Source: Zootoca vivipara
Lineage: Eukaryota
Assembly: GCF_963506605.1 (NCBI RefSeq)
Contig: NC_083276.1
Location: 106,702,001 to 106,766,000 of the forward strand
Reading direction: 5' to 3'
DNA: 64,000 nt
The notes under the pieces were generated by a model. That model did not search any database. It was given only the letters and a program-made list of their open reading frames with translations, and had not been told where the DNA came from. Positions 17,955 through 18,662 of this stretch are shown piece by piece. Position 1 is the first letter of the stretch; each line of letters begins with the position of its first letter. The position numbers and the translations under genes are program-made.

Positions 17955-18662
17955 CAGTGGTACATCGCAAGACGAAATTAATTCATTCCACAAGTCATTT
18001 CGTGTTGCGATAATTTCATCTTGCGAAGTGCGGTTTCCCATAGGAATGCATTGAAATTTAATCAATGCGCACCTATAGGGAAAAGAAAGTGCAAAAAAAG
18101 GTGCCGACTCACCTGCCATGGCCGCTCCGGAAGTTTTTAAGGCCCTGGGGAGGGGGAAGCAGGAGGAGGGCCAGGGAGAGGCTCCCTCCCTCCTTCCCCA
18201 GCAGCCGCTCACGCCCAGCCGTTTGCGCCCAACCAGGCAGCCAGTGGGACTGGATGGGATGGGGGCAGATGGAGCGGTTCAGCAGCCCGCGCTCTGCTCA
18301 ATGACGACCGCTCTCCTGTTCGCGAGCCTCCGCGCAGCCATGCCGTCCTACTCGGTGACGGTGGTGACAGGCAGCCAGTGGTTCACAGGCACTGACGAGT
18401 AAGTAAGGGAGGGGCGCGGGCGGGAAGACAATGGAAACTTCTGCCCGCTCCCTCCCTCCTTCCCCATCAGCCGTACACACTCCTTTCGCTGTTCACACTC
18501 CCAACCAGACGGCCTCTCTCCCGTTCGCGCGCCTGCCCTGCTTCATCTTGCGAAGCATGGCCATAAGAAACTTCGTCTTACGAGTCTCAAAAAAACTCGC
18601 AAAAAGCTTTCATCTTGCGAGTTTTTCTTTGTGCGAGGCATTCGTCTAGCGAGGTATCACTG
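17955..18662. mobile_element. pogo/Tigger-like MITE carrying captured host-gene fragments (Pack-TIR-like)
   Basis: TA on both sides; left TIR CAGTGGTACATCGCAAGACGAA vs reverse complement of right end CAGTGATACCTCGCTAGACGAA (19/22); subterminal TTCRTCTTGCGA repeats; CpG-rich non-transposon interior ~18090-18540. Confidence 0.85.
18340..18402 (+). pseudogene. ALOX5: Captured fragment of ALOX5 (arachidonate 5-lipoxygenase) exon 1
   Basis: gccATG CCG TCC TAC TCG GTG ACG GTG GTG ACA GGC AGC CAG TGG TTC ACA GGC ACT GAC GAG TAA = [20 protein letters not shown]; recalled human ALOX5 N-terminus [20 protein letters not shown] (16/20 identical). Confidence 0.85.

What the first reader, a model, noticed from the sequence alone, without database searches (positions are those of the whole stretch)
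17955..18662. DNA transposon carrying a captured piece of ALOX5 exon 1 (Pack-MULE-like gene capture in a lizard)
Seen: a 708-bp element bounded by TA dinucleotides and 22-bp TIRs (19/22 match) of the pogo/Tigger type. Its CpG-rich interior contains gccATG followed by codons for [20 protein letters not shown] (18340-18402). Known: ALOX5 begins [21 protein letters not shown] (start of the PLAT domain) and is not part of the TANK-PSMD14-TBR1 block. Inference: a non-autonomous TIR element captured the 5' UTR and first ~20 codons of the lizard ALOX5 gene and carried them here, as plant Pack-MULEs and rare animal Pack-TIRs do. The fragment stops well short of the end of ALOX5 exon 1 and has no poly(A), so DNA-level capture fits better than retroposition. 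If multicopy, it is a transposon family spreading a host-gene fragment through the genome.
Basis: partly seen in the sequence, partly recalled or inferred. Interest (0 to 1): 0.9.

Follow-up and report, generated by a model that had tools for sequence, protein, structure and literature searches.

The report
Lizard transposon carrying ALOX5 gene start
A small cut-and-paste DNA transposon in this lizard genome has picked up the start (about 20 bp of leader plus the first 20 codons) of the host 5-lipoxygenase gene ALOX5 and spread it to roughly ten places, a rare but already described kind of event in animals ("Pack-TIR").

Summary
Window 17955-18662 is one 708-bp non-autonomous Tc1/mariner-type element with 22-bp TIRs (19/22) and a TA duplication. 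It sits inside the TIR of an older related MITE. Its GC-rich core carries gccATG plus 20 codons (18340-18399) that match only the ALOX5 N-terminus. The match is best to squamate ALOX5 (17/20; 18/20 for the family majority). No other ALOX5 residue is encoded in the 64 kb.

Contigs of public runs show three things:
- The arms belong to a MITE family with about 2,000 (right arm) to 22,000 (inner left arm) genome-equivalents in this species.
- The ALOX5-bearing core has about 8-19 genome-equivalents. Paralogous contigs cross the arm/core junctions and the ALOX5 3' breakpoint, and one ends at the TIR and then runs into a different flank.
- A sister species (~5% diverged) has a single-copy match confined to 18320-18399, probably its native ALOX5 exon 1. 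It does not carry the element at this site.

No RNA reads fell on the core. The reading of a multicopy Pack-TIR is supported. This is a new member of a known kind, of moderate interest because multicopy animal Pack-TIRs are rare.

The parts
17953..17954 (.). left TA target-site duplication
   Evidence: Deleting the element plus one TA restores the older MITE's TIR, CAG|TA|CCTCATTTGG.
17955..17976 (+). left TIR, CAGTGGTACATCGCAAGACGAA
   Evidence: The family majority reads C at 17964.
17977..18087 (+). left arm: subterminal TTCGTCTTGCGA-type motifs (17999, 18015) and a palindromic MITE centre (18034-18054 / 18062-18082)
   Evidence: Summed contig depth is 250,000-527,000 against a single-copy 23.9 in X1, about 10,000-22,000 times.
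18088..18540 (+). GC-rich core (cargo): GC 0.65, CpG o/e 0.66
   Evidence: Core-less relatives skip 18036-18540.
18137..18243 (+). purine/pyrimidine inverted-repeat module plus direct repeat R1 (18181-18243); far more abundant than the rest of the core
   Evidence: Depth is about 200-900 times single-copy in X1 and 470-1,700 times in X9, but only 1-2 times in the sister species. Repeats.
18320..18339 (+). about 20 bp upstream of the ATG (5'UTR-like, gccATG context), co-aligned with the coding piece in the sister species' single-copy contig
   Evidence: Bin depths put the X14 contig at about 18320-18399. This is an inference from depth fractions.
18340..18399 (+). ALOX5 codons 1-20, [20 protein letters not shown], followed by TAA. 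V9 (GTG) and the ACA codon at 18385-87 are CpG-decay changes private to this copy.
   Evidence: 18365 T>C and 18387 A>G in most paralogous contigs.
18399..18469 (+). sequence after the breakpoint: GTAAGT...hairpin...CATCAG. The AGTA repeat number varies among copies.
   Evidence: Hairpin z = -3.1. Indels at 18397-18401. Only sub-threshold miRNA/mirtron-like Rfam hits. No similarity to intron-1 read-through of squamate ALOX5.
18447..18534 (+). R2: a second, shortened copy of the segment that lies upstream of the ATG (18181-18243 and 18303-18329)
18541..18640 (+). right arm with TTCATCTTGCGA-type motifs (18542, 18569, 18609)
   Evidence: Depth is about 50-850 times single-copy.
18641..18662 (-). 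right TIR (read on the minus strand: CAGTGATACCTCGCTAGACGAA)
18663..18664 (.). right TA target-site duplication
   Evidence: A paralogous contig (X9 record 21) also aligns up to 18665 and then continues 37 letters that do not lie on the stretch.
18665..18931 (+). older, related MITE into whose left TIR the element inserted (its first bases are 17950-17954); abundant in both species

Best explanation
This is a multicopy Pack-TIR. The vehicle is a non-autonomous Tc1/mariner-type MITE that inserts at TA, has 22-bp TIRs and carries repeated subterminal TTCGTCTTGCGA motifs, presumably transposase-binding sites. Its family is very abundant and specific to this lineage. One member acquired, at the DNA level, the 5' end of the host ALOX5 gene: at least about 20 bp of 5'UTR plus codons 1-20.

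The most likely route is template switching, either during repair of the double-strand gap left by excision or at a replication fork stalled in the hairpin-prone centre of the MITE. Both arms stayed intact, so the chimera could still be mobilised in trans by a transposase encoded elsewhere. It spread to roughly ten loci after the split from the sister species.

The copy in this window landed in the TA of an older MITE's TIR. It has since decayed at CpGs (A9V), ends in a stop after codon 20, and shows no transcription, so it is most likely non-functional cargo.

Shown here: the element's structure and TA duplication; the ALOX5 identity of the 20 codons; multicopy status; shared junctions in paralogues; a single-copy homologue in the sister species and no continuation of its contig into the element at this site.

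Inferred: the parent locus in this species, the capture mechanism, and trans-mobilisation.
For: Structure: TIRs, TA duplication, and chance expectation 0. Removing the element restores the older MITE's TIR. Contigs exist that join the left arm to the right arm without the core (18035>18541 with 22 other letters; 18028>18609).

ALOX5 identity: PDB hits are only ALOX5 residues 1-20. Among 1.8e9 proteins the hits are ALOX5 exon-1 ORFs. Identity is 17/20 to squamate P0060 and P0064, with squamate-type Ser5, against 16/20 to mammals and 15/20 to Naja. The majority of paralogues read GCG (Ala9) as ALOX5 does.

Multicopy: depth over 18333-18381 is 306 against 23.9 in X1 and 1,017 against 53.3 in X9. 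9-11 contigs in X1 and 13-15 in X9 carry the majority letters. Depth stays at 8-13 times past the breakpoint (18382-18430). Paralogous contigs cover 17974-18143, 18053-18249, 18261-18419 and 18428-18665 with about 10% differences; the last has 37 further letters that do not lie on our flank.

Lineage: species B, about 5% diverged in the flank, has depth 11.2 (equal to its single-copy level) only over about 18320-18399, and 0 over 18431-18528. Its contig across the left flank stops aligning at 17956 although it has 50 more letters.

Precedent: 370 animal Pack-TIRs are published, 115 on TcMariner elements (PMC8277862).
Against: The species' own ALOX5 locus could not be fetched. Parentage therefore rests on a 20-residue protein match and on an unnamed single-copy contig of a relative.

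Summed contig depth is explicitly not a copy number.

No single contig shows a complete second copy with both TIRs, the insert and its own TA duplication.

Only about 80 bp of the core is ALOX5-like. 18137-18234 occurs in hundreds of copies, and the pre-ATG segment is duplicated at 18447-18534, so the cargo is a mosaic whose history is unresolved.

The paralogues shown differ by about 10%, which is more than the 5% species divergence. CpG decay could account for this, but it was not tested.

The empty-site joint in species B was not among the joints listed.
Confidence: 0.72

Rival explanations
1. The MITE is only the outer vehicle. The ALOX5 piece was brought in by, or together with, a separate repeated GC-rich module (the R unit, 18137-18243 and 18447-18534) that flanks it as a direct repeat. 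There are two versions. In one, a second small mobile or recombinogenic module captured ALOX5 and then nested in the MITE. In the other, an R module already in the MITE was itself ALOX5-promoter-derived and primed a second, homology-driven copying from the native locus.
For: R1 and R2 are direct repeats (27 nt at 96%, plus 18303-18329 ~ 18508-18534 at 85%) that flank the ATG piece. 18137-18234 is 200-1,700 times single-copy, while the ALOX5 part is 8-19 times. A contig joins 18059 to 18151, so the module sits in other MITE copies without the rest. Species B holds the module at only 1-2 times. An unchecked first-stage note reports one GC-rich ~70-bp module inside two transposon superfamilies in this genome.
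Against: No termini, target duplication or coding capacity of a second element can be seen. A partial tandem duplication of the cargo after a single capture explains R1 and R2 equally well. The two versions cannot be told apart without the native locus.
Confidence: 0.15
2. Transposition-independent origin. Filler DNA from ALOX5 was copied into a resident MITE by gap repair, as for most animal Pack-TIRs. The extra copies arose by segmental or tandem duplication rather than by transposition of the chimera.
For: Tan et al. find that 98.6% of animal Pack-TIRs are single-copy gap-filling products. No complete second copy with its own target duplication was seen here.
Against: A paralogous contig ends at the TIR plus TA and then has 37 further letters that do not lie on our flank (X9 record 21). 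This copy is a clean TA insertion into another MITE, and the sister species' contig does not continue into it. The carrier family is extremely active in this lineage, at up to about 22,000 times.
Confidence: 0.08
3. The resemblance to ALOX5 is chance, or the two TIRs belong to two unrelated insertions, so there is no capture at all.
For: The match is only 20 residues long, and GC-rich sequence yields many ORFs.
Against: E is 3e-8 within the window and 2e-4 among 1.8e9 proteins. The match starts exactly at Met1 with a gccATG context. The paralogue majority is closer to ALOX5 than this copy is. The TIR pair is unique in 64 kb, has a TA duplication, and its removal restores the interrupted MITE.
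Confidence: 0.03

Closest known systems
Animal Pack-TIRs (Tan et al. 2021, Nat Commun 12:4280, PMC8277862), in particular the multicopy frog Pack-hAT-N8_XT, which carries 291 bp of the CAPSL 5'UTR on three chromosomes
   Same: A non-autonomous TIR element with intact ends and a target-site duplication. Its interior holds a short 5'-end fragment of a host gene. It is amplified to several loci and is not carried by the outgroup's contig at the site examined here.
   Different: The carrier is a Tc1/mariner-type MITE in a squamate. Copy number appears higher, on the order of ten against three. The cargo is a mosaic containing a module that is itself present in hundreds of copies. The parent locus was not aligned here.
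Plant Pack-MULEs (rice)
   Same: Capture and spread of GC-rich 5' gene fragments by non-autonomous TIR elements; multicopy families.
   Different: A different superfamily. Mutator elements make 9-10-bp target duplications and have long TIRs, whereas this element makes a TA duplication and has 22-bp TIRs. It is therefore not a Pack-MULE. No expression was detected.
Tc1/mariner (pogo/Tigger-like) MITEs of squamates, such as the TcMar-N families of Anolis (Novick et al. 2010, PMC3014272)
   Same: TA target, short TIRs beginning CAGT, non-autonomous, high copy number, ends that resemble Tigger elements.
   Different: Those families were not reported to carry host exons. Assignment of this family to pogo/Tigger rests on a remembered TIR similarity and was not tested.
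ALOX5 (arachidonate 5-lipoxygenase), PLAT-domain N-terminus
   Same: Residues 1-20 match at 16-18/20, with the start codon in place.
   Different: Only 20 of about 674 residues are present, and a stop follows. The piece is not a gene and not a complete PLAT domain.

Membership tests
Pack-TIR (TIR transposon with captured host sequence) | Both termini are those of one TIR transposon family, with a target-site duplication | tested here: met
   22-bp TIRs at 19/22 (20/22 against the family majority), TA on both sides, and contigs of core-less relatives
Pack-TIR (TIR transposon with captured host sequence) | The internal sequence is non-TE and has an identifiable parental host locus | tested here: inconclusive
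   A protein-level match to ALOX5 residues 1-20 and a single-copy contig in the sister species over about 18320-18399. The parental DNA of this species was not obtainable. The origin of the rest of the core is unknown.
Pack-TIR (TIR transposon with captured host sequence) | For the multicopy class: the same chimeric structure at several loci with distinct target duplications and flanks | tested here: inconclusive
   Depth of 8-19 times single-copy, 9-15 variant contigs, shared junctions, and one paralogue with 37 further letters beyond the TA that do not lie on our flank. No full-length second copy was seen.
Tc1/mariner superfamily | TA target-site duplication and short TIRs | tested here: met
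   Related MITEs in the window (26407, 30722, 6641-6722) are also flanked by TA.
Tc1/mariner superfamily | DD(E/D) transposase of the superfamily, in an autonomous partner | not testable with these tools
   The element is non-autonomous, the window holds no transposase ORF, and no lizard genome could be searched.
pogo/Tigger clade | TIR and transposase similarity to Tigger/pogo elements | not tested
   Only a remembered resemblance of CAGTGGTACCTCG to Tigger1-type TIRs. No repeat library was available.
Pack-MULE | Mutator-like termini with a 9-10-bp target duplication | tested here: not met
   The target duplication is TA and the TIRs are 22 bp.
ALOX5 gene or pseudogene copy | Further lipoxygenase sequence beyond the N-terminus | tested here: not met
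   tblastn of ALOX5 fragments up to 239 aa finds only residues 1-20 in the 64 kb.

The most novel reading that the evidence does not exclude
This lizard lineage may host a recently exploded Tc1/mariner MITE family, up to about 22,000 genome-equivalents here against about 3 in a relative only ~5% diverged. That family, together with hAT elements, would repeatedly capture CpG-island first exons and promoters and amplify them. ALOX5 is the case here. Unchecked first-stage notes in the same genome name ATXN7L2 and MCAT exon 1, and a mobile CpG island. If so, this would be an animal counterpart of the rice Pack-MULE phenomenon, with its bias towards gene 5' ends. It would be a natural system in which start codons, 5'UTRs and promoter fragments are being scattered and could seed new transcription starts or chimeric first exons.
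Probability: 0.25. Interest if true: 0.75.

Novelty: new member of a known kind. Interest (0 to 1): 0.5.

Why it matters
Host-gene capture by DNA transposons is well known in plants. In animals it is mostly seen as single, immobile gap-filling products: only 4 of 370 catalogued animal Pack-TIRs are multicopy (PMC8277862). A Tc1/mariner MITE that carries an ALOX5 start and has reached about ten copies in a lizard would add a vertebrate case of transposition after capture, in a lineage where the carrier family is evidently very active. It would also offer a tractable system for asking how capture happens, given the hairpin-rich centre, the duplicated module and the breakpoints, and whether dispersed promoter/first-exon fragments ever become functional. 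For ALOX5 biology itself it has no visible consequence, because the fragment is 20 codons long, ends in a stop and was not expressed in the run examined.

Tried and rejected
- The search for homologous proteins with the 94-aa ORF 18118-18399: no hit. The database therefore holds no called ORFs from other copies.
- Two metagenome scans, one for the ALOX5/breakpoint junction and one for the abundant left arm: 0 matches.
- The search of earlier findings by place (near), by 'ALOX5' and by sequence: nothing.
- Idea that GTAAGT after codon 20 is the native exon-1 donor brought next to codon 20 by an internal deletion: the three-frame translations of 18399-18560 show no similarity to the intron-1 read-through of squamate ALOX5 ORFs. 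Not supported, though only weakly tested.
- Idea that the window holds the real ALOX5 gene: rejected.
- Rfam: only sub-threshold miRNA/mirtron-like hairpin matches at 18146-18207, 18396-18464 and 18812-18886. These were not taken as genes.
- The first hairpin (18140-18212) is no better than shuffles, z = -0.8.
- Expression: no RNA reads on 18284-18528 and next to none on 18235-18283, in 6% of one RNA run. This is weak negative evidence only.
- Pfam on the eight longest ORFs of the window: nothing, so the gene context (TANK-PSMD14-TBR1) was not verified.
- P0002, used as a protein query, is a mammalian-type ALOX5 exon-1 read-through ORF. No contig of it was fetched, saved or compared.

Full report

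The interior 18088-18540 has GC 0.65 and CpG o/e 0.66, against 0.17 in the left flank and 0.45 for the whole window. ATG at 18340, in a gccATG context, opens [20 protein letters not shown] followed by TAA.

**2. Is the peptide ALOX5?**
- A phmmer search of the 20 residues against all PDB chains returns only human 5-lipoxygenase, residues 1-20 after the tag. That protein is an engineered form in which two of the matching residues are mutated.
- A 30-residue query (18310-18399) against 1.84 billion representative proteins returns one low-complexity repeat protein and two ORFs that read ALOX5 exon 1 through into its intron, at E 2e-4 and 6e-4.
- Searching with one of these (P0002, protein only; no contig fetched) gave 97 ALOX5 exon-1 ORFs from many vertebrates. 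All run to ...YNDFERGA(V) before diverging. Exon 1 therefore ends at about residue 51, and the fragment here stops 31 codons short.
- The two lizard/gecko-type N-termini, P0060 and Gekko kuhli P0064 ([20 protein letters not shown]), are the best matches at 17/20. They share Ser5, where nearly all mammal, bird and fish sequences have Thr.
- tblastn of ALOX5 fragments up to 239 aa against the window finds residues 1-20 at 18340-18399 (E 3e-8) and nothing else. This is an isolated fragment, not the gene.

**3. One element or two insertions?**
- Deleting 17955-18662 plus one TA gives ...CTGCACAG-TA-CCTCATTTGGCAAATGGGATCCGTTCCGGCAGCC... This reads as the left end of an older MITE of the same general kind. 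For comparison, the MITEs at 26407, 30722 and 6641-6722(-) read TACAGTGGTACCTCGGTTTACGAAC..AATCCGTTCC... The older MITE runs to about 18931, and a tRNA-like SINE follows at 18962-19314. The 708-bp element is therefore a clean TA insertion nested in another MITE's TIR.
- Contigs of public runs join the left arm directly to the right arm without the core: 18035>18541 with 22 other letters, and 18028>18609.

**4. Anatomy.**
- The arms carry repeated TTCGTCTTGCGA-type motifs in both orientations (17965, 17999, 18015 / 18542, 18569, 18609, 18641) and a palindromic centre at 18034-18082.
- The core is a mosaic. A purine-rich/pyrimidine-rich inverted repeat at 18153-18199 leads into R1 (18181-18243). 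About 70 bp follow, then a tail at 18303-18339, then the ATG piece.
- After codon 20 the DNA reads GACGA|GTAAGT. It forms a hairpin at 18398-18472 (z = -3.1) whose 3' arm is the start of R2 (18447-18534). R2 is a shortened second copy of R1 plus the tail (27 nt at 96% and 27 nt at 85%).
- The segment upstream of the ATG is thus partly repeated downstream, with a period of about 266 bp.

**5. Evidence from public runs.** I laid Logan contigs of two samples of the same species (X1, X9), contigs of a second species (X14, 'organism B') and raw RNA reads (X21) on 17500-18960 at 80% or more likeness. The tool warns that summed contig depth is not a copy number, so I use it only relative to the unique flank. 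That baseline is 23.9 for X1, 53.3 for X9 and 11 for X14.

Depth relative to the single-copy flank:

| Segment | X1 | X9 | Species B (X14) |
|---|---|---|---|
| 18039-18087, inner left arm | about 22,000 times | about 23,600 times | about 3 times |
| TIR-proximal ~35 bp (bin 17941-17989) | about 2,400 times | about 3,700 times | about 2,800 times |
| 18627-18675, right TIR and adjoining flank | about 2,000 times | about 3,000 times | about 1,700 times |
| 18137-18234 | about 200-900 times | about 470-1,700 times | 1-2 times |
| 18235-18528 | 4-19 times | 9-26 times | 0-1 times |
| 18333-18381, ALOX5 codons | 12.8 times | 19.1 times | 1 times |

- The carrier family's internal sequence has expanded in this lineage.
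- At 18365, 9 contigs in X1 and 13 in X9 read C where this copy has T. They hold about 75% and 92% of the depth. C gives GCG = Ala9, as in ALOX5. At 18387, 11 and 15 contigs read G. Both private letters of this copy are CpG-decay products.
- Depth stays at 8-13 times over 18382-18430, beyond the ALOX5 breakpoint. Most of these copies therefore share the chimeric junction and are not the native gene.
- Paralogous contigs with about 10% differences cover 17974-18143, 18053-18249, 18261-18419 and 18428-18665. Together they span both arm/core junctions and the breakpoint.
- The last of these (X9 record 21) aligns to the TIR end plus TA(C) and has 37 further letters that do not lie on our flank.
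- The number of AGTA units at 18397-18401 varies among copies.

**6. The sister species.**
- Its contig over the left flank differs at 23 of 457 positions, about 5%.
- That contig stops aligning at 17956 although it has 50 more letters. It therefore does not continue into the element. The expected empty-site joint was not among the 15 joints listed.
- In the core, species B has depth 11.2, equal to its single-copy level, in bin 18333-18381 only. The partial bins imply a span of about 18320-18399. Depth is zero from 18431 to 18528. The contig carries C at 18365 and G at 18387.
- The simplest reading is that this is species B's native ALOX5 5'UTR end and exon-1 start. Its homology to the element ends where the ALOX5 peptide match ends.
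The contig is not named, so its identity as ALOX5 is an inference.

**7. Expression.** In about 6% of an 18-Gb RNA-seq run of the species, reads cover the arms, as expected for MITE copies in transcripts genome-wide. None lie on 18284-18528 and next to none on 18235-18283. There is no sign that this or the other copies are transcribed in that sample. Nor were native ALOX5 reads seen, so the tissue may not express the gene.

**8. Mechanism (inference).**
- The arms hold everything needed in cis, so the chimera behaves as a MITE moved by a transposase encoded elsewhere.
- Capture most likely happened by template switching. This could be during synthesis-dependent repair of an excision gap, or at a fork stalled in the hairpin-prone, G-run-rich centre. 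Tan et al. propose these two routes for single-copy (gap filling) and multicopy (FoSTeST) animal Pack-TIRs.
- The R1/R2 duplication around the ATG piece fits either of two histories. One is a partial tandem duplication of the cargo. The other is a second, homology-primed copying from the native locus into a MITE that already carried an ALOX5-upstream module.
- The fact that 18137-18234 is hundreds-fold in this species but 1-2-fold in species B is compatible with the second history. Neither can be decided without the native locus.

**9. Comparison with what is known.**
- Animal Pack-TIRs are published: 370 in 100 genomes, 115 on TcMariner elements, and only four multicopy cases in frog and alligator. 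One of those carries 291 bp of a 5'UTR on three chromosomes (PMC8277862).
- The Anolis DNA-transposon survey describes Tigger-like TcMar non-autonomous families, and capture of extraneous DNA by hAT/hobo elements and Helitrons. A term search of that paper found no mention of 'exon' or 'host gene' (PMC3014272).
- The present case is therefore a new member of a known kind. Its notable points are a Tc1/mariner carrier, a squamate host, and a copy number on the order of ten.
- It is not a Pack-MULE, because the target duplication and the TIRs differ.
- Assignment to 'pogo/Tigger' is untested.

**10. Leads from the scan's own notes** (unchecked AI notes, titles only). The same genome has first-stage notes of a mariner-type element with ATXN7L2 exon 1, hAT elements with MCAT exon 1 and with a promoter plus exon 1, a CpG island as hAT cargo, and one GC-rich ~70-bp module in two superfamilies. 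I tested none of these. If they hold, this genome may show a systematic capture of first exons.

**11. Limits.**
- No lizard genome collection is searchable.
- Still open: the exact 5' and 3' breakpoints, the origin of about 370 bp of the core, the true copy number and insertion sites, and the parent locus in this species.

**12. Verdict.** Novelty: new member of a known kind. Interest: 0.5.

Noticed in passing
window 17950-17954 + 18665-18931: An older MITE of a related Tc1/mariner-type family, abundant in both species. Its left TIR (CAG-TA-CCTCATTTGGCAAATGGGATCCGTTCC) was split by the 708-bp insertion. It has an internal 29-nt inverted repeat at 18814-18884, which gives a sub-threshold Rfam mir-607 hit (40.8 bits against a gathering score of 94).
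   Followed up: partly
window 18962-19314 and 58830-59170: Two copies (about 90% identical) of a tRNA-like SINE (GGGTTAAACCACTGAGCC...GGTTCGAATCCC). It probably explains the small word shares of the 'RNA?' runs X15-X20.
   Followed up: no
window 26407-26468, 30722-30938, 6641-6722(-): Further TA-flanked MITEs whose TIR reads CAGTGGTACCTCGGTTTACGAAC (one copy degenerate, CAGTGTACCTTGG...). They share the TIR start with the ALOX5-carrying element but have different subterminal sequence. The copy at 30767-30938 has an internal 82-bp tandem duplication.
   Followed up: no
window 18100-18135, minus strand: Read on the minus strand, the left part of the core looks like another gene start: TTAAAAACTTCCGGAGCGGCCATGGCAG|GTGAGT. 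That is an ETS-like CTTCCGG, a Kozak ATG, and a donor after 7 nt of coding sequence. It is too short to assign to a gene. It could be a second captured first exon, or chance.
   Followed up: no
window 18399-18469: The sequence after ALOX5 codon 20 starts with GTAAGT, folds into a GC-rich hairpin (z = -3.1) and ends in a pyrimidine tract plus CAG. This gives it a mirtron-like outline, with only sub-threshold Rfam hits (mir-877, mir-H20, mir-343). No RNA reads support it.
   Followed up: partly
window 17990-18087, from run contigs: The inner left arm of this MITE family is about 22,000 times single-copy depth in this species but only about 3-50 times in a relative that is ~5% diverged. This points to a very recent, lineage-specific burst or sequence turnover of the family.
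   Followed up: partly
window 17794-17891: A short stretch of the otherwise unique left flank has 10-38 times single-copy depth in both species, which suggests a fragment of some older repeat.
   Followed up: no
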